Part shown: positions 665 to 19,137 of the stretch, one piece after another
Layout: every line of letters begins with the position of its first letter
How positions within the stretch are numbered: position 1 is the first letter of the stretch
From: Octopus sinensis
Lineage: Eukaryota
Length of the DNA: 19,137 bases
Reading direction: 5' to 3'
Assembly (NCBI RefSeq): GCF_006345805.1
Contig: NW_021824353.1
Location: forward strand, 1 to 19,137
The notes under the pieces: generated by a model
The model's input: the letters and a program-made list of their open reading frames with translations, nothing else
Told to the model about the DNA's origin: nothing
Database searches by the model: none
Made by a program: the position numbers and the translations under genes

Positions 665-1090
665 CTCCTTTACTCTTTTACTTGTTTCAGTCATTCGACT
701 GCGGCCATGCTGGAGCACCGCCTTTGGTCGAGCAAATCGACCCCAGGACTTATCTTTTGTAAACCTAGTACTTATTCTATCGGTCTCTTTTGCAGAAACG
801 TTAGGTTACGGGGACGTAAACACACAACCATCGGTTGTCAAGCGATGTTGGGGGACAAACACAGACACACAAAATAAACACATATACACACACACACACA
901 TATATATATATACATATATACGGTGGGCTTCTTTCAGTTTCCGTCTACCAAATGCACTAACAAGGCTTTGGTCAGCCCAAGGCTATAGTAGAAGACACTT
1001 GCCCAAGGTGCCACGCAGTGGGAATGAACCCGGAACCATATGGTTGCTAAGCAAGCTACTTACCACACAGCCACTCCTACGTGTGTGCCT
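665..1090 (-). mobile_element. tRNA-derived CORE-type SINE, family A, full length
   Basis: The minus strand reads a tRNA-like head with an A-box-like TGGCTGTGTGG and a B-box-like GGTTCATTCCC. Then come CORE-like CACCTTGGGCAAGTG, an internal TA/TG microsatellite, body, a CAGTC-N4-GACTG stem-loop and a GTAAAAGA-type tail. More than 10 homologous copies lie in the window. Confidence 0.9.
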
Positions 1091-4520: not shown

Positions 4521-4798
4521 TACTCTTTTACTTTTCACAACATCTCTGGAATTGCAAAACAATATTTTTTTTTTTCCCCGAGATTCTTCTCTTTTACTTG
4601 TTTCAGACATTTGACTGCGGCCATGCTGGAGCACCGCCTTTAGTCGAGCAAACCGACCCCAGAGCTTATTGATTGTAAGCCTAGTACTTATACTATCGAA
4701 CTCTTTTGCCGAACCGCGAAGACACAGGGACGTTAACACACCAGCATGGTTGTCAAGCGATGTTGGGGGGACAAACACAGACACACAAACACACACAT

Positions 4799-4831
<33 letters not shown>

Positions 4832-5227
4832 CATATATACATATAAGTACGGGACGGGCTTCTTTCAGTTTCCCTCTACCAAATCCACTCACAAGGCTTT
4901 GGTCGGCCCGAGGCAATAGTAGAAGACATTTGCTCAAGGTGCCACGCATTGGGAATGAACCCGGAACCACACAGCTACTCCTACGCCTATTCTGTGTATT
5001 TACTTGTGTGTCTGTCTATCTCTGTCCCTTTTACCCCCTCCCTCCCTCTCTCTCTATCTGTACATCTCTCCTGCAATGCTCAAACTGCAATATTTAGTTT
5101 CAGAGAAGCATCTCAAAAATGTTTGTTTTAAAAAGAATAGGTTTCACTCAGGACCCCTGTGGATCGCCAGACACTGTTTCGCATGATTCAGTCTCCTCAC
5201 TGACAAGCACCCACGTATGTTCCGAGT
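4521..5227 (+). repeat. Unclassified ~350 bp repeat, copy 2, interrupted by a family A SINE
   Basis: Homology to 2888-3258 stops at 4587 and resumes at 4989. Confidence 0.75.
4588..4988 (-). mobile_element. Family A SINE, near full length, with 5-bp target-site duplication ATTCT
   Basis: Well-preserved copy. ATTCT at 4583-4587 and 4989-4993; the paralogous empty site has one ATTCT at 2944-2948. Confidence 0.9.
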
Positions 5228-5254: not shown

Positions 5255-5430
5255 TGTTGGTTTCAAATTTTGGTACAAGGCCAGCATTTTCGGGGGAGTA
5301 TTGAACTGGCACTTATTTTATCGACCCCGAAAGGATGAAAAGCAAAGTCGACCGCAGCAGCATTTGAACTCAGAACGAAAAGCAGCTAAGAATTTGCCTG
5401 GGGGCTAACGATTCTGCCAGATCGTCGTCT
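5255..5430 (-). mobile_element. Family B SINE, internally deleted
   Basis: TATCGACCCCGAAAGGATGAAAAGCAAAGTCGAC...TTTGAACTCAGAACG...GCTAACGATTCTGCCAG matches 16790-16916. Confidence 0.85.
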
Positions 5431-5439
5431 TATATCCAC

Positions 5440-5575: not shown

Positions 5576-5693
5576 CTCAGCTCATCCCTTTATAAAACAC
5601 GTTTTATTTTTTACGATAAAATCAGAAGGGAGTTCAGTAATGTAGTTTTCAATCCAGAGGGATTAATTAAGGAAACTTCATTAGTATATACGC

Positions 5694-6013
5694 CGGCACT
5701 CTGTCGGTTATGACAACGATGGTTCCAGCGGGATCTGATCAACAGAACAGCCTGCTCGTGGAATTAACATGCATGTAGCTGAGCACTTAATAGTCATGTG
5801 TAGCGTTAAGGTTTTTCTCAGGAAAATTCAGCATGAAAACAGAGTGTGACAAAGCCGGCCCTTGGAATTGCAGGTACAGCTAATTTTTGCCAACTGAATG
5901 GACTGGAGCAACGTGAAATAAAGTGTCTTGCTCAAGGACATAGCGCTTTGTATTGAACCTACGACCATACGATCGTGAGCCAAACACCTGAACCACTTAG
6001 CAACGCGCCTTCA
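5694..6013 (-). mobile_element. tRNA-derived CORE-type SINE, family C
   Basis: The minus strand starts TGAAGGCGCGTTGCTAAGTGGTT, has B-box-like GGTTCAAT and CORE-like GTCCTTGAGCAAGACACTT. Homologous to 16289-16589 and 16599-17149. Confidence 0.85.
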
Positions 6014-6139
6014 TTACAGGTGAGAGAGAGATGTGAGGTCTTTGAAAGCTTTTGGTCCAATGGAACCAGAGTTGTTCTGGAACTACTAAATAACTACTGA
6101 GGACTTCAAAACGAATTGTACAGCAAAAGAACAGTTGTA

Positions 6140-6675
6140 ATCCACCCGTGACCGTCCCTTGTGTTACTCAGACATAGTGTATCTAGGACTACATTATCTA
6201 ATGTATAATATAGCAGTTAGTATTAGGAACTGTAATTATTGTTGTTTAGCCCCAGGTCAATCTTGATCCAGCAAACCTATGATCAAAGATGTTCCAGCTG
6301 TGACCATCCCAACTGTTATTCAGACATAGTCCATCTAGGAATACACTATCTAATGTATAGTGTAGTAGTTGATATTAGTGGCCATAGTTGTTATTTAACC
6401 CCAGGTCAACCATGATCCGAATGACCTACAATCAAAGACGTTCCAGTTGTGACCATCCTATCTTTTATTGAGGAATAGTCTATCTAGGATTGCAATATGC
6501 AATGTACTGTAGAGTACTTTTGTTGTACTTGTATAGCCCTTGGTCAACCCTGATCCAGTAGACCTATGACCGATGATGTTCCACTTGAGGCCACCCCACC
6601 TAAAGAATATTAAGAGGGCAGCGTATGATTTGCTGTTATTTCTAGCAAATCGACCGACCAGGTAGTGGTTTCCTT
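6140..6675 (+). repeat. Left arm of foldback: ~3.5 tandem ~140-150 bp units plus terminal module
   Basis: GTGACC(A/G)TCC at 6148, 6300, 6449 and degenerate ~6586; CCCCAGGTCA, TGATCC and ATCTAGGA recur. Confidence 0.85.
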
Positions 6676-6680
6676 CTCAC

Positions 6681-6771
6681 CTCGTATTGCAGTATCGGCT
6701 GCTGCTGTTGGTGCTGGTGGTGTTGGTGCCGTTCCTGCTGCACCTGGCTGTAAATTGCTGATTGATCAAAT
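6681..6771 (-). CDS. Candidate 91-nt internal exon, Q/H-rich (FDQSAIYSQVQQERHQHHQHQQQQPILQYE); host gene unknown
   Basis: Minus-strand acceptor TGTGTTCTAG and donor GAG|GTGAGA bound an open frame with mixed CAG/CAA/CAC codons. A plus-strand alternative (6693-6749) also exists, so this is ambiguous. Confidence 0.3.
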
Positions 6772-6893
6772 CTAGAACACAGCATTACAACAACTTCAGC
6801 AGCTGTTGTTGTTGTTGTTGTTGCTGCTGTTCCCAGCCTTTGAAGTAGTAGCATGAACAACAGTGACGGCAACAAACGCAGACACCAACCACT

Positions 6894-7468
6894 GAGTGCC
6901 TCTACCTGGTTGATTAATCTGCTAGAAACAGCAGTCAAATCTTTTATGTCTTTACACAAAGCTCAATCTTTGAGGTAGTGTAGTCCTAGATACACATGTC
7001 TGGGACATCTTTTGTCATTGGTCTCAGTTGGATCAGGACAGACCTTGGGCTAAATAAACAACTACTAGTACTAACTAGTAATATTATACATTGAATAATG
7101 TAGTCCCAGATGCACTATGCTTGAATAAAAGACAGGATGGTCACTGTTGGAACATCTTTGATCATATGTCTACGGGGTTAGGACTGACCTAAGTCCACTA
7201 ATACTAACTACTATACTATAAATAAGAAAATGTAGTCCTAGATAGGATGGTCACGGCTGGAACGTCTTTGATCATAGGTTTGCTGAATCAGGACTGACCT
7301 GGGACTAAACAATTTATGCAAACTAATACCAACAGCTACACTGCACATTAGATAATGTAGTCCTAGATACACTATGTCTGAACAAAAGATGGGACGTCAC
7401 AGCTAGAACACCTTTGATCATGGATCTGCTGGATCAGGATTGTCCTGGGGTTAAACAACAACAATAAA
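6894..7468 (-). repeat. Right arm of foldback: terminal module plus 4 tandem units, inverted relative to 6140-6675
   Basis: TAGTCC(T/C)AGAT at 6981, 7101, 7233, 7358; GGATGGTCAC at 7135 and 7245. The reverse complement of 7324-7467 aligns closely with 6236-6378. Confidence 0.85.
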
Positions 7469-7841
7469 CCTCCACATATCCTACTCGACTCTCGTGCTGC
7501 CTGTAGATAGGGGGACCATTGTTGGATGAAGGCTCGACCCTTGCTTGTTAGGGTTATGCTGGATATATGGGGTCCCTCGCCTGACCCTAATTGCATCCTG
7601 CCTTATTTCTTCCATATCCACGTAATATTTTTTCTGTATTATGGATGCCTTTCCTCTTACTTCTCCCTCATATGACCCCCGTCTTCTTTCCCCCTTTTTT
7701 ATATAAACCCCCGCTCAACAAATTACCCTGCTAGGGTAAGGTCGCCCTCACTGGGTGCTCTTTTGGAAAGCGTAAATCACATTTGTCCGTTTGATTCTGA
7801 CGATCTATAGTTCACGCACACACAGACACACACACACACAG

Positions 7842-8345
7842 AGGCGCAGGTGTAGCTGTGCGGTATGAAGTTTGCTTCCCAACCACATGGTTCCGGGTTC
7901 GATTCCACTGCGTGGAACCTTAGGCGGGTGTCTTCTACTATAGCCCCGGCCCGACCAATCTAAGCCATCGCCCGAGGATTGCTTCGCTGGTTGAAACTTC
8001 GAAGACACTGTCAGCATTCTTGTATAATAAGAATAATAAATCTGTACTCTACAAAAGTACAGGACTTTTGTAGAGTACAAATCTATGTAAAATTGTTATA
8101 ATTGAACATAAGTACACACATATACAAATGTGTGTGTGTTTGTCCCCTACTACTGCTTGACAGTCGACGTTGGTTTGTTTACGTCCCGTAGATTAGCGCT
8201 TCGGCCTTAATGACTGATAGAATAAGCAACAGGCTTTAATAAAAACAATAAGTACCGGGATTAATTCTTTCGACTGACAAATTCTTCAAGGCGGTGCCCC
8301 AGCATGGTCGCAGGCAGTCAAATGACTGAAACAGGAAGAATATAA
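7842..8345 (+). mobile_element. Family A SINE carrying an internal insertion (~7965-8120)
   Basis: Head AGGCGCAGGTGTAGCTGTGCGG..GGTTCGATTCC; body resumes ~8130; stem-loop CAGTCAAATGACTG at 8315-8328. Confidence 0.85.
7996..8083. mobile_element. Palindromic MITE-like element fragments (right half, then start of the next left end)
   Basis: Perfect 16-bp inverted repeat TGTACTCTACAAAAGT (8043-8058) / ACTTTTGTAGAGTACA (8064-8079); homologous to 8688-8778. Confidence 0.55.
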
Positions 8346-8485
8346 AAAGAAACGTGTGCGCGCGCGGGCGTTAAGTGTTACGTACGTCTCTTCGACTTGT
8401 TGGCGGTTGGCTGGCCGGTGTGTCGGCTGGCGTTTAATGGCTGACTGCTATAATCTCGTTTGAAGTGATTGTGTTTTGTCAACAG

Positions 8486-8778: not shown

Positions 8779-8809
<31 letters not shown>

Positions 8810-8810
8810 C

Positions 8811-9193
8811 ACTCTTTTACTTGTTTCAGTCATTTGACTGTGGCCATGCTGGAGCACCGCATTTAGCCTAGCAAATAGACCCCCGGACTTATTCTTTGTA
8901 AGCCTAGTACTTATACTATCGGTCTCTTTTGCCAAACCGCTAAGTTAAAGGGACATGAACACACGAGCATCGGTTGTCAAGCAATGTTGGGGTGGGACAA
9001 ACACACACATATATACATATGTATATATATGACGGGCTTCTTTCAGTTTCCGTCTACCACATCCACTTACAAGGCTTTGGTCAGCCCGAGGCTATAGTAG
9101 AAGACACTTGCCCAAGGTGCTACGCAGTGGAACTGAACCCGGAACCATGTGGTTCGTAAGCAAGCTACTTACCACACAGCCACTCTTGCGCCT
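8811..9193 (-). mobile_element. Family A SINE, full length
   Basis: High similarity to 665-1090 and 4588-4988; all modules present. Confidence 0.92.
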
Positions 9194-9287
9194 ATATAGG
9201 GAGAATTCACAAAAAAAAAACGCGAAGATAGGTGGTGTAGACAACAAACATGTATTAGTTTAATGCTCGGCAAGTGAAAAAGTCTTT

Positions 9288-9655
9288 GGCACGCAGGTGT
9301 AGATCTGTGTTATAAGAAGCTTGTTTCAGAGTCATATAGTTCCGCGTTCAATCCCACAGCCTGGCACCTTCGGTTGTGTCTTCTGGTATAGCCTCGGGCC
9401 GGCCAATGCCTTGTCAGTGAATTTGGTGGACGGAAATTGAAAGAAACATTGTGTTTGTGTGAGTATCCTCCACCACCGCTTCACAACCGGTGTTGGTGAA
9501 TTTATGTCCCCCTAAGCTATCGGTTCGGTGATAGAGACCGATGGAATAAATACCAGGCTTCCAAAAAGTACTGGAGTCGATTCATTCGACGAAAGTTCTT
9601 CCAGGTGGTGCCCCAGCATGGCCGCATTCTAATGACTGACACAAGTAAAACATAT
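9288..9655 (+). mobile_element. Family A SINE, diverged, full length
   Basis: Head, GGCACCTT..GTGTCTTCT, GACGGAAATTGAAAGAA, body and GGTGCCCCAGCATGGCCGCA tail. Confidence 0.85.
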
Positions 9656-9680
9656 AGGATATATGTATGTGTTTGTGTGC

Positions 9681-9967: not shown

Positions 9968-10320
9968 CTTTTCTTTTTGTTTTAGTCATTGGACTGCGCC
10001 CATACTGGGGCACTGCCTTGGAGGGTTTAGTCAAACAAATCGACCACAGTACTAGTCTATTGGTCTCTTATTCCAAACCGCTAAGTTATGAGAACACAAG
10101 CAAACCAACACCTGTTGTCAGGAGGTGGTCGGGTGGACAACCATGAAGACACACACACACACACACATATATACATATGGCGGGCTTCCTCACAGTTTCC
10201 GTCTACGAAATTCACTCAAAGCATTTGTTGGCCTGGGCTATAAAAGAAGACAGTTGCTGAAGGTGTCACATATTGACGCTGAACTCAAAATCACGTGGTT
10301 GGGAAACAAGCTTCTAAAGT
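9968..10320 (-). mobile_element. Family A SINE, diverged
   Basis: TAGTCATTGGACTG, AAATCGACC, AACCGCTAAGTTA, GGCGGGCTTC..CAGTTTCCGTCTAC. Confidence 0.85.
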
Positions 10321-10488: not shown

Positions 10489-10664
10489 TGACAACCGATG
10501 TCGGTATGTTTACGTCCCCGTAACCTAGCGGTTCTGCAAAAGAGACTGATAGAATAAGTACTAGGCTTGCGAAGAATAAGTCCTGGGGTCGATTTGTTTG
10601 ACTAAAGGCGGTGCTCCAGCATGGTCTCAGTCAAATGACTGAAACAAGTAAAAGAGTAAAAAGA
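10489..10664 (+). mobile_element. Family A SINE, 5'-truncated, well preserved
   Basis: Near-identical to the reverse complement of the tails at 665-850 and 8811-8990; ends GTAAAAGAGTAAAAGAG. Confidence 0.9.
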
Positions 10665-10705
10665 GTATATGTGTGTGTTGTATTTGTGTGTGTGTGTGTG
10701 TGGCA

Positions 10706-10908
10706 TAACAGGGGTTACGAAAAAGTTATCGCAGAAGGCCTGGTTGGAGGTCCAACGTTCCGAATTCTTTTACAGGGCTTAGAAAAACTGAAGGACCACT
10801 GCAATAAGTCTGTGGATCTGAGAGGGGAATATGTTGAACAAAATCATAATTAACTGATCCTCCTCTATTTCCTTTTTCTAAAGGCAGGAACTTTTCAGCA
10901 CACCCTTA
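10706..10908 (+). mobile_element. Mariner-derived non-autonomous element (MITE), copy 1
   Basis: Right TIR GGAACTTTTCAGCACACCCTTA; degenerate left TIR. Interior encodes LLQGLEKLKDHCNKSVDLRGEYVE, resembling the mariner transposase C-terminus (..G+.KL..RW.KC+...G.Y.E). Confidence 0.8.
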
Positions 10909-10910
10909 TA

Positions 10911-11030
10911 GATTAAGTACTGGGCTTACAAAGAATAAGTCCCGGGGTCTATTTGTTCGACTAAAGGCGGTGCGTGCTCCAGCATGGCCGCAGTCAAATG
11001 ACTGAAACAAGTAAAAGAGAGAAAAAGAAA
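10911..11030 (+). mobile_element. Family A SINE 3' tail fragment
   Basis: AAGAATAAGTCC..GGGGTC..CGACTAAAGGCGGTGC..CAGTCAAATGACTGAAACAAGTAAAAGAG. Confidence 0.9.
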
Positions 11031-11039
11031 AGCAAGAGA

Positions 11040-12543
11040 TATATATATAAAGATCCTATATTTGAATTTTGTGTGTATAAGCATTCGGCTCTGTCTATGT
11101 ATGTCAGCATGATTATGGTGTGTGAATCTGTGCTAATTTGTATATGGAGAATGTGTGTGTGAGGCCGCGTAATAATTGCTCCGAATGCATGTATTGTATG
11201 TAGGAATCTCTGCGCATATTTTTATAAAGTGCAGTGTATGCGTATATGGATGTGTATATGCCTCAATCTATACATGTGTCAGCGCGATTTGCTGTCTGGA
11301 TCTGTGTGTGTATATATATATATATTTTGTGTGTGCGTGTTAATCTCTCCATGTATGCGTACTGGCGTGTATATGCATGTATGTACGGATCTCCGTATAT
11401 ATATTTGTTGTCAGTGTGTTGTGTGTGTTAATCACATTGTAAATATGTGTATATATATATATATACGGAACTGTATATTAATATCTCAACGTGCTGTGTG
11501 TGAGAGATTGTGGGTGTATATATCTGGCTCTATTTACATGTGTCAGCGTAATTCGGTGTGTGTGTGTATGTGTAAAGCTGTGTGCATGTATGTTTTGAGT
11601 ATATATATGCATGTTTGTGCATTATTCACTCCGTGTGAGTGTGTAATATATGTCAATGAGCTGTATATGTGTGTGTGTGAATCTGCGTGTATATATGCTA
11701 GTTGAATGTGCGATGTATGCATGTATATGTATGTGTGTGCATGTTGAATGTACGTAAATGTGTGTATATGGCTGTGTATGTGTATGTATAATGCACATCG
11801 TATGTGCATGCGTATATAAACATATCTGTTTATATGTCAATGTGTGTTTATATCCGTGTGTGTGTGTGTGTGGTTCCGTTTATGTGTGTCTGCGTATTTT
11901 GGTCTGTGTGTATCGAGTTCTGTGTATACATGTGTTGCATGTATATTTAGGTGTGTGTGTGTGTGTGTGGTGTGTGTGTGTTAAGCATTCCGTGTGTGCG
12001 TGCGTGCTTAACTGTTTGTGTCAGCGAAATTCGATGCGCACGTGTATGTGTATATATGGATCTGTGTGTATATATATGTCCCAGGTGTTCTGTGTAGGCG
12101 CGTATGGCTCCATGTGTGTAGCGTGTGTTTGCTGTTACGTTTGTATGTATGTGCATTTGGTGTATGCATGTGTATGCGTGTATGTGTCTGTCGACGTTAT
12201 ACCGCACGTGTATATGTGTATATACGCTTGCCTCTGTGTATGTATGTGCTGCGCATTTTCTAATGTGTGTGTTTGTGTACGTTTGTGTACACACATACTT
12301 ATATAATAATATACATATATGTGTATATTTGTGTAGGTCTGTGTGTGTGTTTGTGTGTGTGAAACTATGTATACATGCTTCAGTGCTCTATGTGTGTATA
12401 TATTTATGTGTGTGAATCAACGTGTGTGTGTGTTATATATATGTATAGGCGTGTGTATTTGTGTCAGTCTGTCTGTATGGCATAATGTATATATGTATAT
12501 ATGTACGACTGTTTGTGTGTGCATATGTATTTATCGATATGTG

Positions 12544-12574
<31 letters not shown>

Positions 12575-13288
12575 TATCGTACAGGCTTTAGTTCTGTTCG
12601 GTTGTGTATGCAGGTGCGCGTGTATGTTTGTATATATGTAATCTCATTTTCGTGTGTTCCTATGCGTTGCGCATGCATACCTGCCGTCGTGTGTGTGTGC
12701 GTGTGTGATGTGCATGCACTTTTGGCGTAGTGTAAGAGTGTGTGTGTGTGTGTATGTGCGTATATTTATACATGCGTGTGTGGGTGTTTTCGCGCGCTTC
12801 CAAACTGTGACAGCGCAGCAATAGTTGCCTCTATTACGCATGCGCAGAACCAACGCCACTGCGTCTCCATGTATTTGTGTTTGTATACGTATCTATATGT
12901 GTGTGTGTGTGTGTGTATAATATAATGTGTGGTGTATATTATATAGGTTGTATCTGCAGTCAGGCATATATATATTTATGATAAAGAAAACAAACGCAAC
13001 CACATATTTACACACACGCACACACACACACACACATGCACACATGCACACACACACACACAGACACACACACATATGCAAATTTATACGTACAGAAAGT
13101 GGCACATTTTCTTTAATGTACGTACACTGTGTTCAACCGATGTGTACGAATTTGTATATTGTATGTATATGCCTGCGTACATATATGCATGTATAAGTGT
13201 GTATATGTGTATGTTTTTATGTATGTAGTTATGTGTATCTATGCATTATATGTATGTATTTATGTATGTGTGTATGTATGTATGTATG

Positions 13289-13319
<31 letters not shown>

Positions 13320-13466
13320 GAATCTATGTTTGTGTGTATGTATATGTATGTATTTATGTATGTATGTATGTATATGTATGTATGTATGTATGTATGTAAT
13401 GTATGATGTTAGGTATGTATGTATTTATGTATGTATGTATTTATGTATGTTTGTATGTATTATATG

Positions 13467-13497
<31 letters not shown>

Positions 13498-14730
13498 TGT
13501 ATGTATATGTATGTATGTATGTATTTATGTATGTATGTATGTATTTATGTATGTATGTATTTATGTATGTGTATGTATGTATGTATGTATGTATATATAT
13601 GTATGTGTGTATGTATGTATTTATGTATGTATATGTATGTATGTATTATGTATGTATATGTATGTATATATTTGTGTATGTATTATGTGTATACATATAT
13701 GCATGTATTTATGTGTGTGTATATATTTATGTATTATTTATATGCATGCATGAGTGCGTAATATTCATACACATACGTTTGTGTGTGTGTATATATATAT
13801 TCGAATCTACACTCGGTAAATGTATCTCATTGTATCTCTATCGACATAAGTACGCATTCACACTCACATATATACACATACACATACACACTCAATATAC
13901 ACATACGCACACGCGCACGCATATCATCTCAGCGACTGACACGCACCTGTATGTATATCACACACACATGCATTCATACGCAATTGCGAACACACGCACC
14001 TGCGCGCGCATGCACGCGCATACATGCGCGCGTACACACCTTCACGTCTCTCAGAAGCGACGTATTTCCACCGTGCAGTGTCTTGTATCTTTATAATGCA
14101 TTTTACATAGATGTACGTCTGAGGAGTCCTTATTCAATTTTAAGCTTTGAGTATGTCAAAATTGCACAAGGTCTTCGCAATGACCTTGTGTGCGTATGTA
14201 TACACACGCACACGTGCTCTAATTTCTACTGTCTCATTCTCTTTCTGTCCCTCTCTCTTCCTCCCTCCCTCTCTCCTTCCCTCCCCCTCTTTCTCTCTCT
14301 CTCTCTCTCAAATCGGATATGTGTATTTCACTTTGTATGCGTATGTGAAGCAAGCGCATAGACATACCTGTGTGTGTATGTATGTATATATTTATGTGTG
14401 TATGTATATATATATATATAATGTATATATCTGTTTGTGTATGCATACATTTATGTGTGTGTATATATATATATATATATATTATGTATGTGTTTGTGTA
14501 TATGTAATGTATGTATATATGTGTATGTATATATATATATACGTGTGCATGTATGTGTGTATATATATATATATATATAATATATATATAATATATATAT
14601 ATGAAAGTAAACAAAGATATATACACATACACACCCGTACAATCGATCACCGACTTCTCTGCTCGCATACATGTGTGTGAGTGTGTGGTGTGTGCGTGTG
14701 TGTGAGTGTGTGTGTGTGCGTGTGCGTTAG
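11040..14730. repeat. ~3.7 kb compound low-complexity block: degenerate (TG)/(TA), (TATG)n core ~13190-13750, CA-rich segments ~13000-13080 and ~13860-14040, (CT)-rich 14230-14310
   Basis: Seen directly; source of all YV/CV/MY/HT-repeat ORFs. Confidence 0.95.
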
Positions 14731-15410: not shown

Positions 15411-15427
15411 TATATCGTGTGATATAT

Positions 15428-15700
15428 AGGCGTGGCTGTGTGGTAAGAAGCTTGCTTCCAATCAACATGGCTCTGGGTTCAGTCCCTCTGCGTGGCACCT
15501 TGGGCAAGTTCCTTCTACTATAGCCTTGGGTTGACCAAAGCCTTGTGAGTGGATTTGATGGATGGAAACTGAAAGAAACCCGTGTATGTGTTTGTCCCCG
15601 TCGCCATCACTGCTTGACAACCGGTGTTAGTGTGTTTACGTCCCAATAACTTAGCAGTTCGGCAAAAGACATCGATAGAATAAATACCAGAATAAGTACC
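15428..15700 (+). mobile_element. Family A SINE lacking the 3' terminus
   Basis: TGGCTGTGTGGTAAG, GGGTTCAGTCCC, CACCTTGGGCAAG; body to GATAGAATAA. Confidence 0.9.
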
Positions 15701-16160: not shown

Positions 16161-16288
16161 GTGAGTCCATGACACGTGGTGCGATGGGAGTGGCATGGTG
16201 GGGGATGTTTTAGGAAATCTGCTAAGCTTCCTGATTAGCCTAGATGTGATACTGATGTGATGAAACATTGCTCCATTCTTCAAAAACC

Positions 16289-16589
16289 GGCGTCACTCTG
16301 TCGGTTACGACGACAAGGGTCTCTGTTGATCCGATCAACGGACCAGTCTGCACGTGAAATTAACGTGCAAGTGGCTGAGTACTCCACAGACACGCATATC
16401 CTTCATGTGGTTCTCGGAGAGATTCAGCGTGACATAGTGTGATAAGGCTGGCCTTTTGAATTACAGGTACAACTTATTTTCGCCCGCCGAGTAGACTGGG
16501 GCAAACTGAAATAAATTGCCGCTGGGAATTGAACTCGGAGCCTTAGAATTGTGAGCTGGTTACGCGATCCACTAAGCCACAGGCCTTCA
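16289..16589 (-). mobile_element. Family C SINE
   Basis: Colinear with 5694-6013 (CACTCTGTCGGTTA, GAAATTAACGTGCAAGTGGCTGAG, CAGGTACA, CCACTAAGCCAC..GCCTTCA). Confidence 0.85.
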
Positions 16590-16598
16590 CTAAAAAAT

Positions 16599-17149
16599 GG
16601 CACTCCGTCCACTACGGCCATGACCATTCCAGTTGATCCAATCAATGGAACAACCTGTTCATGAAATTAACATACACACATACCTATTTCTTTATTACCC
16701 ACAAGGGGCTAAACACAGAGGGGACAAACAAGGACAGACAGACGAATTAAGTCGATTACATCGACCCCAGAGCGTAACTGGTACTTAATTTATCGACCCC
16801 GAAAGGATGAAAGGCAAAATCGACCTCGGCGGAATTTGAACTCAGAACGTAACGGCAGACGAAATATGGCTACGCATTTCGCCCGGCGTGCTAATGTTTC
16901 TGCCAGCTCGCCGCCTTAATGTACCCTTAATGTAGTTCGCAGGGCGAATCAGCGTTATACAAAACGTGCTAAGGCTGAGCCTTTGAAATTCAGGTATAAC
17001 TCATTTTTTGCCTCCATTTTTTTCCAGCTGTGTGGACTGAAGCAATGTGGAATAAAATATCTTGCTGAAGGACACAACCCGCCGACGGGAATCGAACTCC
17101 TGATTTTACGACTGTAATACGAACAACTGAACCAGTGGACCATCCTTCA
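16599..17149 (-). mobile_element. Family C SINE, diverged, split by a nested family B insertion
   Basis: C tail at 16599-16672; C body and head resume at 16917-17149. Confidence 0.75.
16679..16916 (-). mobile_element. Family B SINE, full length, well preserved
   Basis: Minus strand AGGCGGCGAGCTGGCAGAAAC...GAGTTCAAATTCC (B-box)...GCCTTTCATCCTTTCGGGGTCGATAA...tail. Confidence 0.9.
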
Positions 17150-17660: not shown

Positions 17661-17699
17661 ACGACGCATATTTCCCCTCCACCAATACTCTCACATGGT

Positions 17700-17752
17700 T
17701 TTTTGTTAGACCCTAGGCTATAATAGAAGACACTTGCCCAAGGTGCCACGCC
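17700..17752 (-). mobile_element. Family A SINE CORE fragment
   Basis: GGCTATAATAGAAGACACTTGCCCAAGGTGCCACGC. Confidence 0.8.
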
Positions 17753-18355: not shown

Positions 18356-19137
18356 CAGGGTGCGGTGAATAAAGCTGTCGTCTAAATTACGCAAAAATGA
18401 AAATAACACTGATGTCTGTCTCATTTTAACAGATATATTTACCAAAATTACATGAAAATACCTTAAAATACTAAAGAGTAAATTTATTCAATAAAATCGC
18501 CACTAGCTTCAACCACGGTCTCCAGTGGCCTTCGGAATCTCCTGCAACTTTTCTGGACGGCCACCTTGTTTAATTTGGCGAATGCCGCCACAATCCTTGC
18601 TTTCAGTTCATATTTTGTGTGTTACAAGGAGTTTTGTGGGTCTCTTGCTCAACAGCGCCCCACACATAATAATCTAGGGGGTTACAGTCTGGGGAGTTAG
18701 GTAGCCAGATGTTAGGGGTGATGTGGTTGCAGAAATTGTCTGACAGCCATAACTGGGTACTCTTGCTTGGGTGGCATGGAGCAGAGTCCTGTTGCCAGAC
18801 ATAGGGTCTTCCAGCAGCCACCCTCTTGACCCAGGGGAACACTACCTCCTCCAAGCACTTGATATATGCCTTCATGTTGAATCTGAAGCCGTGTGGGAAG
18901 ATGAATGGAGACATAACATTGCCATCACTAGTGATCACTCCAAACACCATAATGTTGACTGGGTGTTTGATTTTTATCACTCTCGGTACATGTCCTCAGA
19001 TTGACACCTAAACACTCTGAAATGTTCGTACCGGAGCTTCAGGCGCGAATACCAAACTGTACATCATGTCGTTTCCAAATTTCTGGCAGTCTGAATTGTG
19101 TCTTGATGCCGTTTTTACTCACAGACGTCCCAACTGA
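18356..19137 (-). mobile_element. Tc1/mariner superfamily DNA transposon, DD37D (maT-type), internally deleted; other TIR lies beyond the window
   Basis: TA at 18354-18355 then TIR-like CAGGGTGCGGTGAATAAAG; transposase remnant inside. Confidence 0.88.
18484..19090 (-). pseudogene. DD37D transposase pseudogene
   Basis: KHPVNIMVFGVI..WQQDSAPCH..SPDCNPLDYYVW, with 37 residues between the 2nd and 3rd catalytic Asp. A frameshift near 18615 leads into YELKARIVAAF..SGDFIE* (stop 18484-18486). The N-terminal remnant (PEIWKRH..IRA*SS..CLGVNLRT) is fused directly to the catalytic region near 18990. Confidence 0.88.

What the first reader, a model, noticed from the sequence alone, without database searches (positions are those of the whole stretch)
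6140..7468. ~1.3 kb foldback: inverted arms made of tandem ~120-150 bp units around a 210-bp loop
Seen: the left arm (6140-6675) has ~3.5 units and the right arm (6894-7468) has 4 units in reverse orientation. Both end inward in the same module (GATTTGCTGTTATTTCTAGCAAATCGACCGACCAGGTAG versus CTACCTGGTTGATTAATCTGCTAGAAACAGCAGTCAAATC). Outer units 6236-6378 and 7324-7467 align closely as reverse complements. Established: foldback transposons have long TIRs built of tandem subrepeats; long intronic duplexes are ADAR substrates and can drive exon skipping or back-splicing; coleoids edit RNA extensively. Inference: either a foldback-type element that captured a sequence, or two inverted arrays forming a ~500-bp RNA duplex whose tandem units allow several pairing registers.
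Basis: partly seen in the sequence, partly recalled or inferred. Interest (0 to 1): 0.7.

Follow-up and report, generated by a model that had tools for sequence, protein, structure and literature searches.

The report
Inverted pair of octopus repeat copies
The 1.3-kb foldback is real, but it is most likely two old, decayed copies of a common non-coding octopus repeat lying tail-to-tail, an ordinary arrangement in this repeat-rich genome rather than a foldback transposon or a demonstrated RNA device.

Summary
Arms 6141-6668 (+) and 6899-7477 (-) align collinearly at 78.5% identity. Each has about three 150-bp tandem units plus a unique inner module, and they flank a 230-bp spacer. As RNA the region folds far below shuffled controls (z -24 to -32).

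The foldback-transposon reading is not supported:
- The outer ends share no terminal domain.
- No target-site duplication exceeds chance.
- The spacer matches no protein.

The window is octopus DNA. In 20 kb of Octopus vulgaris fetched for comparison, four distant relatives (~70% identical) of the unit-plus-module element occur. All are unpaired or in direct orientation. Their homology to the arms ends close to where the two arms stop matching each other. So the family's own 3' ends face inward, and the "loop" is DNA between two repeat copies.

Arm divergence (K2P ~0.25, roughly 35 My), 113 unaligned bases and symmetric G·U versus A·C mismatches (24 vs 27) give no sign that pairing is selected. 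Two SINE copies build an equally stable hairpin (z -24) 2 kb away.

Transcription, editing and back-splicing could not be tested. Whether the pair arose by two insertions or one local inverted duplication is unresolved. Interest is low.

The parts
6141..6668 (+). Left arm: one copy of the repeat in element orientation. It holds three ~150-bp tandem units plus the 3' module, and is truncated at its outer (5') side.
   Evidence: Collinear inverted alignment with the right arm. Unit profile hits at E 1e-36 to 8e-45. No significant unit homology left of 6141.
6148..6299 (+). Unit L1
   Evidence: Best partner is R1: 88% by ungapped-column count, 84.8% in the alignment.
6300..6448 (+). Unit L2
6449..6586 (+). 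Unit L3, with an ~11-14 nt deletion
6587..6668 (+). Left inner (3') module, ending ...ACCAGGTAGTGG. It contains the hairpin GATTTGCT-N9-AGCAAATC at 6627-6651.
   Evidence: (I16). The same module is found in four O. vulgaris copies.
6669..6898 (.). Spacer ('loop') between the two copies. About 25-45 nt at each side is probably the weakly conserved 3' region and G/T-rich tail of each copy. The non-palindromic core is about 6741-6857.
   Evidence: Homology of all copies drops after ...TAGAGGC. Inverted 32-nt match 6707-6740 / 6858-6889 and direct 50-nt repeat 6686-6735 / 6784-6833. No protein or Pfam match. No Rfam match above noise.
6899..7011 (-). Right inner (3') module. It is preceded in element orientation by a 31-nt unit fragment at 6971-7001 and holds the hairpin CTGCT-N6-AGCAG.
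   Evidence: (I16).
7012..7145 (-). Unit R3
7146..7255 (-). Unit R2, with about 40 nt deleted
7256..7400 (-). Unit R1
7401..7477 (-). Half unit R0 (7401-7468) plus about 9 nt of the element's 5' region (ATATGTGGAGG). Both are shared with O. vulgaris copy B but absent from the left arm.
   Evidence: Unit profile positions 82-148, E 1.7e-13. The alignment to L001 copy B runs to 7477.

Best explanation
**What it is.** The foldback is a tail-to-tail inverted pair of two old copies of a dispersed, non-coding octopus interspersed repeat.

**The element (5' to 3').**
- A short head.
- A ~150-bp core, present once in the relatives seen elsewhere and tandemly amplified to about 3.5 copies in this subfamily.
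- An ~80-110-nt 3' module with a small conserved hairpin (CTGCT-N6-AGCAG), ending ...ACC(A/G)(C/G)(A/G)TAG(A/T)GG(C).
- About 25 weakly conserved bases and a G/T-rich simple tail.

**How the copies lie.** The 3' ends of the two copies point at each other across about 170-230 bp. The 'loop' is therefore inter-element DNA plus tails, not the middle of a transposon and not a captured gene fragment.

**Shown versus inferred.**
- Shown: the anatomy, the hairpin-forming potential, the existence of unpaired relatives, and the coincidence of the arms' inner boundary with the family terminus.
- Inferred: the pair is a neutral by-product. It arose either by two insertions of an array-bearing subfamily (my slight preference, about 0.4) or by one local inverted duplication of a resident copy (about 0.35). 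One locus cannot separate these.

**What it does.** By design, nothing. Its physical consequence is a ~520-bp imperfect duplex (78% paired, helices up to 37-41 bp). If the region is transcribed in one piece, that duplex would be a good ADAR or Dicer substrate. As DNA it could extrude a cruciform.
For: **The arms belong to a dispersed family.**
- A SINE-derived ORF from the window hits an Octopus vulgaris protein. Its 20-kb locus L001 shares the window's SINE family.
- A module profile built from the two window arms alone picks four L001 sites as its four best hits, all on one strand (E 0.001-0.033). With the L001 copies A and B added, the held-out copies score E 5e-11 (C) and 1e-5 (D).
- Unit-like sequence lies upstream of modules A, B and C, in the same order and strand as in the arms. 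Local alignment scores are 58 and 61, against a maximum of 43 in 200 shuffles and 45 in 51 control segments. nhmmer gives E 2e-4 to 0.07, with none in a shuffled control.

**The family terminus sits at the arms' inner boundary.**
- In a six-way alignment all copies share GATTTGGCTGCTGTTTCTAGCAG...CCACATAGAGGC and diverge just after it. That is where the two arms stop matching each other (6668 / 6899).

**Relatives are not paired.**
- They are solo (C, D) or head-to-tail (A-B), never inverted.

**No transposon boundaries.**
- No outer shared domain, no TSD beyond chance, no subterminal inverted repeats.

**Neutral decay.**
- 78.5% identity, K2P 0.17-0.35 with no significant heterogeneity (p = 0.13), 113 unaligned bases, G·U 24 vs 27 on the two strands.

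**Base rate.**
- Two SINE copies 2 kb away form an equivalent hairpin (z -24.1).
- The genome is about 66% repeats (PMC13282606).
Against: - Only one extra locus (20 kb) of octopus DNA could be examined.
- The relatives there are distant (~70% identical), carry a single unit, and may belong to another subfamily or species.
- The abundance and usual arrangement of the array-bearing subfamily are therefore unknown.
- Both arms carry the same number of full units, and about 25 nt past the family end are similar between them. This fits one duplication event at least as well as two insertions.
- The element's 5' end, its superfamily and its mode of transposition were not established.
- Transcription was not tested, so a function of the hairpin is not excluded.
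Confidence: 0.7

Rival explanations
1. **Local palindromic duplication.** A single resident copy of the repeat had its core tandemly amplified in place. It was then copied in inverted orientation together with its tail, by snap-back priming or template switching at a break or stalled fork, leaving a ~120-230-bp spacer.
For: - Both arms have three full units plus the module in the same order.
- All seven units are about equally diverged from one another: 76-88% both within and between arms. Amplification and arm separation were therefore close in time.
- Inverted similarity continues about 40-70 nt past the canonical end, to 6740 / 6858. Its last ~25 nt are not shared with the O. vulgaris copies.
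- The relatives seen elsewhere have one unit only.
Against: - The arms' mutual homology drops close to where the homology of the L001 relatives ends. A duplication junction has no reason to fall there. The weak extension could equally be a subfamily-specific tail.
- No private indel is shared in register between the arms.
- Inverted pairs of abundant repeats arise readily by insertion, as the SINE pair shows.
Confidence: 0.35
2. **True foldback transposon.** A non-autonomous element of the FB / Tetris / Galileo type. Its long terminal inverted repeats are built of tandem subrepeats plus an inner domain around a variable, possibly captured, middle domain. It is mobilised by a transposase encoded elsewhere.
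For: - The architecture of tandem-repeat domain, inner domain and non-coding middle mirrors the scheme described for Tetris (PMC4079207).
- Arm lengths may differ in such elements.
- Decay (~25% divergence) could have erased TSDs.
Against: - No shared outermost flanking domain. The right arm carries a half unit and head that the left lacks.
- TSD candidates are at chance level: one 6-mer and a few 5-mers among 3,800 boundary pairs.
- The family's conserved termini face inward.
- Four relatives in O. vulgaris are unpaired or in direct orientation.
- The middle has no protein similarity.
Confidence: 0.08
3. **Functional hairpin-RNA locus.** The inverted arrays are maintained because the transcript's long duplex is used. 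It could serve as an ADAR substrate or sponge, as a source of endogenous small RNAs, or as intronic pairing that loops out the spacer for exon skipping or back-splicing.
For: - Very stable predicted duplex on either strand (z -24.5 / -32.3).
- Perfect helices of 37-41 bp.
- Several possible registers.
- On the + strand the spacer has an acceptor-like TTTCCTTCTCACCTCGTATTGCAG at 6669-6692. Its complement reads as a donor-like GAG|GTGAGA on the - strand (my reading).
- Repeat-derived dsRNA is the main editing target across metazoa (PMC5625713, listed but not read; from my own knowledge).
Against: - No evidence of transcription was obtainable.
- The spacer encodes nothing recognisable and matches no Rfam family.
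- Mismatches are not biased toward G·U on either strand (24 vs 27), and 113 nt are unpaired through indels.
- Divergence equals that of neutral SINE copies.
- An equivalent hairpin arises from two SINEs nearby.
Confidence: 0.07
4. **Assembly artefact.** A chimeric long read produced a false palindrome.
For: Foldback chimeras do produce inverted duplications (general knowledge).
Against: Such artefacts give near-identical arms. These arms are 78.5% identical, with many private indels and different outer ends.
Confidence: 0.01

Closest known systems
Inverted pairs of interspersed repeats (e.g. inverted Alu or SINE pairs) forming long imperfect dsRNA
   Same: - Two diverged copies of a dispersed non-coding repeat lie in opposite orientation a few hundred bp apart.
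- They are predicted to fold into a long imperfect duplex.
- The arrangement is expected from insertion alone in a repeat-rich genome. The window holds a SINE-built example at 8786-9679.
   Different: - The arms are longer (~520 bp) and internally tandem, so several pairing registers exist.
- The two 3' ends face each other.
- Transcription and editing are untested.
Foldback transposons: Drosophila FB, Tetris (D. virilis), Galileo (P superfamily)
   Same: Long inverted arms containing tandem subrepeats (Tetris: ~220 bp), an inner domain and a non-coding middle domain (PMC4079207).
   Different: - No outermost flanking domain shared by the two ends.
- No 7-10-bp TSD.
- Conserved family termini face inward.
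- Relatives elsewhere are unpaired.
Tandem-repeat-bearing non-autonomous elements of molluscs: Cg_HINE (Helentron derivatives) of Crassostrea gigas; DTC84 and pearl-type MITEs
   Same: - Short arrays (mostly 5 or fewer) of 140-180-bp monomers are carried inside a dispersed non-coding element.
- The array is followed by a short right-hand module with a palindrome near the 3' end.
- No TSD (PMC7492417; PMC4067079).
- Copies A and C in L001 are preceded by TA/TG microsatellite.
   Different: - No 11-13-bp subterminal inverted repeats.
- 17-45 nt follow the palindrome.
- No left flank with a microsatellite next to the window arms.
- T-flanks are inconsistent.
- No link to a Rep/helicase partner.
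Drosophila hairpin-RNA (hpRNA) loci that yield endogenous siRNAs, some with tandemly repeated arms (from my own knowledge; not checked here)
   Same: A long inverted repeat with repeated units that could be transcribed as one hairpin.
   Different: - hpRNA arms stay highly complementary and target specific genes.
- Here the arms are 78.5% identical with no sign of maintained pairing, and no target or small RNA is known.

Membership tests
Foldback transposons (FB / Tetris / Galileo type) | Long inverted arms containing tandem subrepeats | tested here: met
   Arms of ~520-580 bp with three to four ~150-bp units.
Foldback transposons (FB / Tetris / Galileo type) | Conserved outermost terminal (flanking) domain present at both ends in inverted orientation | tested here: not met
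   Left outer flank 5980-6140 against the reverse complement of 7469-7640 scores 20, against a shuffle mean of 19.6 (132 of 300 shuffles score as high). The right arm has a half unit and head with no left partner.
Foldback transposons (FB / Tetris / Galileo type) | Target-site duplication (7-10 bp) flanking the whole element | tested here: not met
   The best candidates are one exact 6-mer and a few 5-mers among 3,800 boundary combinations. About 0.9 and 3.7 are expected by chance. Decay of ~12% per copy limits the power of this test.
Foldback transposons (FB / Tetris / Galileo type) | Other genomic copies share the paired architecture, with family termini pointing outward | tested here: not met
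   Four relatives in 20 kb of O. vulgaris are solo or head-to-tail. Family homology ends at the arms' inner boundary. The sample is small and the relatives are distant.
HINE / Helentron-derived non-autonomous elements (mollusc Cg_HINE) | Central short array of 140-180-bp tandem repeats | tested here: met
   Units of 138-152 bp, three to four per arm.
HINE / Helentron-derived non-autonomous elements (mollusc Cg_HINE) | Right flank of about 60 bp after the last repeat, with a palindrome at the 3' end | tested here: inconclusive
   A module of ~80-110 nt with a hairpin is conserved in five of six copies. However, 17 nt of strongly conserved and ~25 nt of weakly conserved sequence follow the hairpin.
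HINE / Helentron-derived non-autonomous elements (mollusc Cg_HINE) | 11-13-bp subterminal inverted repeats at the 5' and 3' ends | tested here: not met
   No 11-mer with at most one mismatch links either outer flank to its inner module.
HINE / Helentron-derived non-autonomous elements (mollusc Cg_HINE) | Left flank with a microsatellite; T-rich insertion site; no TSD | tested here: inconclusive
   L001 copies A and C are preceded by TA/TG microsatellite, but the window arms are not. The bases after the end are T, A, T, C, T in five copies. No TSD was found.
SINE / LINE-mobilised retroposon | Pol III-type head (tRNA, 5S or 7SL derived) | tested here: not met
   ARAGORN finds no tRNA-like sequence. 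Rfam finds nothing at gathering score or at E <= 1 apart from noise.
SINE / LINE-mobilised retroposon | Defined 3' end with an A-rich or simple-repeat tail; variable 5' truncation; flanking TSD | tested here: inconclusive
   G/T-rich tails follow three of five copies, and A7 follows one. The left arm is shorter at its 5' side. No per-arm TSD was evident by eye; the programmatic TSD scan covered only the outer boundaries of the whole structure.
Functional long-hairpin RNA loci (hpRNA; ADAR or circRNA-promoting intronic duplex) | Both arms transcribed in one RNA; editing, small RNAs or back-splice junctions observed | not testable with these tools
   No expression data were available. Exact-ORF look-ups in public assemblies found nothing.
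Functional long-hairpin RNA loci (hpRNA; ADAR or circRNA-promoting intronic duplex) | Pairing maintained by selection | tested here: not met
   Identity is 78.5% with 113 unaligned nt. G·U-compatible transitions number 24 (+) against 27 (-). Divergence lies within the range of SINE copies in the window (67-89%).

The most novel reading that the evidence does not exclude
The array-bearing subfamily might be a genuine mobile or selected hairpin unit of octopus genomes. That could mean a foldback-like element that transposes as an inverted dimer. It could also mean a conserved long-hairpin RNA locus whose slippable ~150-bp registers feed ADAR or small-RNA pathways in a lineage known for heavy RNA editing. 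The present evidence covers one locus plus 20 kb of a related genome, with no expression data. It disfavours this reading but does not exclude it.
Probability: 0.07. Interest if true: 0.55.

Novelty: new member of a known kind. Interest (0 to 1): 0.2.

Why it matters
As it stands, little. The result removes a tempting 'foldback transposon with captured cargo' reading. It also shows that long hairpin-forming inverted repeat pairs are commonplace in octopus DNA, with two in this one 19-kb window.

Two by-products may be useful:
- A sketch of an apparently unclassified octopus interspersed repeat: a ~150-bp core that can amplify in tandem, a 3' hairpin module and a G/T-rich tail. Its architecture recalls the tandem-repeat-bearing elements of bivalves.
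- A reminder that such pairs form the pool of long dsRNA that ADAR and RNAi machinery would meet if the region is transcribed.

If expression data showed heavy editing or small RNAs here, the tandem-register feature would become interesting.

Tried and rejected
**Searches for other copies of the unit family**
- Two exact-pattern scans of JGI metagenome contigs with conserved unit motifs found 0 hits.
- A protein-level search with the longest unit ORF found no candidates.
- A concatenated query of all spacer and arm ORFs found nothing at E <= 0.01.
- A control with a SINE ORF found only two proteins. The protein collection therefore barely samples octopus non-coding DNA, and these negatives say little.

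**Exact-ORF look-ups to locate the window or transcripts**
- Six look-ups all came back 'not on record'.

**Known RNA families**
- Rfam and ARAGORN on the window and the arms gave nothing beyond microsatellite noise.

**Ideas tested and dropped**
- A CACTA-like terminus: the left arm ends ...TAGTG. I rejected this as a chance pentamer. The right arm reads CTCTA, and these ends face inward.
- A canonical Helitron end: there is a hairpin, but no CTRR terminus in any copy.
- A degenerate extra unit left of 6141: the best alignment, 6029-6099 against a unit, reaches only p of about 0.03. The profile search does not find it, so it is left as uncertain.
- A shared 5' 'head' motif in both outer flanks, seen by eye: not supported statistically.
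- A gradient of arm identity from outside to inside (85%, 77%, 76%, 73%): not significant (p = 0.13).
- The spacer as an exon or captured gene fragment: no protein or Pfam support. The splice-like motifs there are my reading only.

**Literature**
- Searches for foldback elements in octopus or cephalopods returned no papers.
Full report

Yes. The repeat finder, a self-BLAST and a Smith-Waterman alignment all show two inverted arms.
- 6148-6668 on the + strand aligns collinearly with the reverse complement of 6899-7400.
- The two best inverted BLAST alignments have E = 3e-53 and 4e-52 within the 19-kb window.
- Nothing else in the window resembles the arms.

Cutting the arms at a recurrent GTGACC motif gives the units.
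- Left arm: L1 6148-6299, L2 6300-6448 and L3 6449-6586, followed by a unique inner module at 6587-6668.
- Right arm, read on the - strand: a half unit R0 (7468-7401), then R1 7400-7256, R2 7255-7146 (about 40 nt deleted) and R3 7145-7012. A 31-nt unit fragment and the inner module follow (7011-6899).
- A profile of the six full units finds exactly these copies (E 1e-25 to 8e-45), plus R0 (E 2e-13) and the fragment. It finds nothing to the left of 6141.

Two details differ:
- The spacer is 230 nt (6669-6898) rather than 210.

Off-register pairings of 71-89% complementarity confirm that several registers are possible.

**2. Folding**

- As RNA, 6141-7468 folds to -597.2 kcal/mol on the + strand and -615.5 on the - strand.
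- Dinucleotide shuffles give about -350 +/- 9, so z is -24.5 and -32.3.
- The minimum-energy structure has 359 left-arm to right-arm pairs, 24 of them G·U.
- Uninterrupted helices reach 41 and 37 bp, and the longest exact complement is 37 nt.

The arms are far from identical: 357 of 455 aligned positions match (78.5%), with 51 transitions, 47 transversions and 113 unaligned bases. This rules out a chimeric-read assembly palindrome.

**3. What organism and what surroundings?**

The window is microsatellite-rich eukaryotic DNA with no tRNA or Rfam hit. It carries at least ten copies or fragments of a ~400-bp SINE.

An ORF read through that SINE matches a 'hypothetical predicted protein' of Octopus vulgaris. 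The 20-kb locus around that protein is L001, on chromosome record OX597840.1 of GCA_951406725.2. It holds the same SINE family at up to 89% identity. The window is therefore octopus DNA, although the species is not established.

**4. The key result: the arms belong to a dispersed repeat family**

Weak hits of the unit profile and of BLAST clustered in one part of L001, so I followed them up.

*Module hits.*
- A profile of the inner module built only from the two window arms returns four L001 sites as its four best hits. All are on the same strand: C 12338-12298 (E 0.001), A 14785-14745 (0.007), B 14444-14400 (0.025) and D 884-848 (0.033).
- With A and B added to the profile, the held-out copies C and D score E 5e-11 and 1e-5.

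*Unit hits.*
- Upstream of A, B and C, on the same strand and in the same order as in the arms, lies unit-like sequence.
- Local alignment scores of the right arm against A and B are 61 and 58. The maximum is 43 in 200 shuffles and 45 in 51 control segments.
- nhmmer with single arms gives E 2e-4 to 0.07, with no hit in a shuffled control.

*Shape of the relatives.*
- A, B and C align with each other over 265-358 nt at 68-71% identity.
- They are single-unit elements of about 330-350 nt.
- A and B abut head-to-tail. C is 2 kb away and D is 11 kb away.
- None has an inverted partner.

*Where homology ends.*
- In a six-way alignment of the 3' regions all copies share GATTTGGCTGCTGTTTCTAGCAG, about nine variable bases, then ACCACATAGAGGC. 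In the window the last motif reads ACCAGGTAG(T/A)GG.
- The copies lose clear similarity just after it.
- That point is where the two window arms stop matching each other (6668 and 6899).
- About 25 more bases are weakly similar among copies (...AGT..TTGGRTG). G/T-rich simple sequence follows in three of five.

The arms are therefore two copies of an interspersed repeat whose own 3' ends face each other. The 'loop' is the DNA between them plus their tails.

**5. Tests of the foldback-transposon reading**

The scheme described for Tetris and other foldback elements has an outermost flanking domain, a tandem-repeat domain and an inner domain. These surround a non-coding middle, and the element is bounded by 8-10-bp target-site duplications (PMC4079207). 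The window reproduces the tandem-repeat, inner and middle parts, but the rest fails:
- The outer flanks share nothing. The alignment scores 20 against a shuffle mean of 19.6.
- The right arm has a half unit and about 9 nt of element 'head' that the left lacks.
- Direct repeats at candidate boundaries are at the chance level: one 6-mer and a few 5-mers among 3,800 boundary pairs.
- The conserved family ends point inward.
- The spacer has no protein or Pfam similarity, so nothing supports capture of a gene fragment.
- The spacer holds a 50-nt direct repeat (6686-6735 / 6784-6833, 37/50 identical) and a 32-nt inverted match (6707-6740 / 6858-6889). Both are made of (GYT)n-like sequence.

**6. Comparison with tandem-repeat-bearing mollusc elements**

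Oyster Cg_HINE elements carry short arrays, mostly five or fewer, of 140-180-bp monomers. The array is followed by a ~60-bp right flank with a 3' palindrome, and the elements create no TSD (PMC7492417; PMC4067079).

The octopus element resembles this in several ways:
- the unit size;
- the array length;
- a hairpin in the 3' module, which varies in sequence but is present in five of six copies;
- microsatellite upstream of copies A and C.

But I found no 11-13-bp subterminal inverted repeats. 17-45 nt follow the hairpin, and the flanking bases are not consistently T. I therefore do not file the element as a HINE.

A SINE-type origin is also unproven:
- There is no tRNA, 5S or 7SL-like head.
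- The simple-repeat tails and the 5'-shortened left arm would fit retroposition.

**7. Is pairing maintained?**

No sign of it.
- In-register identities are 84.8%, 76.6%, 76.2% and 72.8% from outside to inside. They are not significantly heterogeneous (p = 0.13).
- Transitions that would still give G·U number 24 for a + strand RNA and 27 for a - strand RNA.
- All units are about equally diverged from one another, whether within or between arms (76-88%). Only L1-R1 stands out.
- No indel is shared in register.

The units were therefore nearly identical when the arms separated, and they have decayed independently since.

Pairwise distance is about 0.25. A published octopus calibration equates Jukes-Cantor 0.09 with 25 My and 0.2 with 56 My to consensus (PMC13282606). 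Half the pairwise distance then corresponds to roughly 35 My. This is an inference. SINE copies in the window are 67-89% identical to each other, so the arms sit within the neutral range.

**8. Base rate**

Two kilobases downstream, two SINE copies in opposite orientation form a hairpin (8786-9200 and 9290-9679). Its energy is -432.7 kcal/mol against -245 +/- 8 for shuffles, z -24.1. That equals the focal structure on the + strand.

The genome is about 66% repeats, and relatives of the arm family occur four times in 20 kb of L001. Inverted neighbours of this kind are therefore expected in large numbers without any special mechanism.

**9. How the pair arose**

Two routes remain, and one locus cannot separate them.

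*(a) Two insertions of an array-bearing subfamily, tail to tail.*
- Both arms end at the family terminus.
- The outer extents differ.
- Such pairs are commonplace.

*(b) One resident copy whose core was amplified in place and which was then duplicated in inverted orientation with its tail.*
- The number of full units is equal in both arms.
- The units show a star-like relationship.
- About 25 nt of similarity lie beyond the family end.
- The known relatives have a single unit.

I lean slightly to (a), about 0.4 against 0.35. A true foldback transposon gets about 0.08. A selected hairpin-RNA function is not exclusive of the origin question and gets about 0.07.

**10. Limits**

- No octopus genome or transcriptome could be searched directly.
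- The metagenome scans and protein searches that returned nothing have little power, because even the very abundant SINE finds only two proteins in that collection.
- The family picture rests on one additional 20-kb locus with distant relatives.
- Transcription, editing, small RNAs and splicing are untested.

**11. Verdict**

The structure is real and statistically striking. It is best read as an ordinary inverted pair of decayed repeat copies. It is a new example of a known kind, built from an octopus repeat family that may not yet be classified. Interest is 0.2.

Noticed in passing
window 8786-9679: A second foldback: two copies of the abundant ~400-bp SINE lie in inverted orientation (about 8786-9200 on +, 9290-9679 on -). 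RNA folding energy is -432.7 kcal/mol, z -24.1, as extreme as the focal structure on the + strand.
   Followed up: yes
window 668-1081, 1793-2062, 4587-4969, 7842-7958, 8118-8350, 8801-9198, 9290-9679, 9977-10315, 10489-10693, 10905-11030, 15423-15690, 17672-17751: At least a dozen copies or fragments of one ~400-bp SINE-like repeat, 67-89% identical to each other. The same family fills the O. vulgaris locus L001. An ORF through it matches a 'hypothetical predicted protein' of O. vulgaris, which suggests that gene model is repeat-derived.
   Followed up: partly
window 18603-18980 (- strand): A 125-aa ORF that looks like a relic of a Tc1/mariner-type DDE transposase. It matches the catalytic domain of Sleeping Beauty SB100X (5cr4_A, E 1.7e-7). 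Pfam and NCBIfam scans were silent.
   Followed up: partly
window 6686-6735 and 6784-6833; 6707-6740 and 6858-6889: The spacer of the foldback is not random. It holds a 50-nt direct repeat (37/50 identical) and a 32-nt inverted match. Both are built of (GCT/GTT/GGT)n-like sequence, possibly the tails of the two repeat copies plus a third tail fragment.
   Followed up: partly
window 6669-6692: TTTCCTTCTCACCTCGTATTGCAG reads as a good 3' splice acceptor on the + strand. Its complement CGAG|GTGAGAAGG reads as a 5' donor on the - strand. This is by eye only, with no exon evidence.
   Followed up: no
window about 11000-13100 and 13200-13734: A 2-kb G/T-rich block with strong GC skew (+0.3 to +0.5), followed by a 535-bp (TGTA)n array. 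The window also holds many other dinucleotide microsatellites.
   Followed up: no
window 8036-8058 / 8064-8086: A short near-perfect palindrome: 23-nt arms, 91% complementary, 5-nt spacer.
   Followed up: no
window 5691-5925 and 16288-16518; 5304-5432 and 16776-16918: Another, unidentified repeat family, present just upstream of the foldback and again 10 kb downstream (74-77% identity, same strand).
   Followed up: no
L001 14382-15060, 12275-12600, 848-909 (O. vulgaris OX597840.1, about 30.83-30.85 Mb): Four single-unit relatives of the arm element, all on the - strand. A and B abut head-to-tail at 14713/14711. A and C are preceded by long TA/TG microsatellite. A, B and C lie within the range of a gene called on the - strand (11480-20324). 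D lies within the range of an Ig-domain gene on the + strand.
   Followed up: partly
window 6029-6140: Possible degenerate extra unit at the outer side of the left arm. The best alignment of 6029-6099 to a unit gives p of about 0.03, and the unit profile does not find it. It abuts the end of a SINE copy at about 6019.
   Followed up: partly
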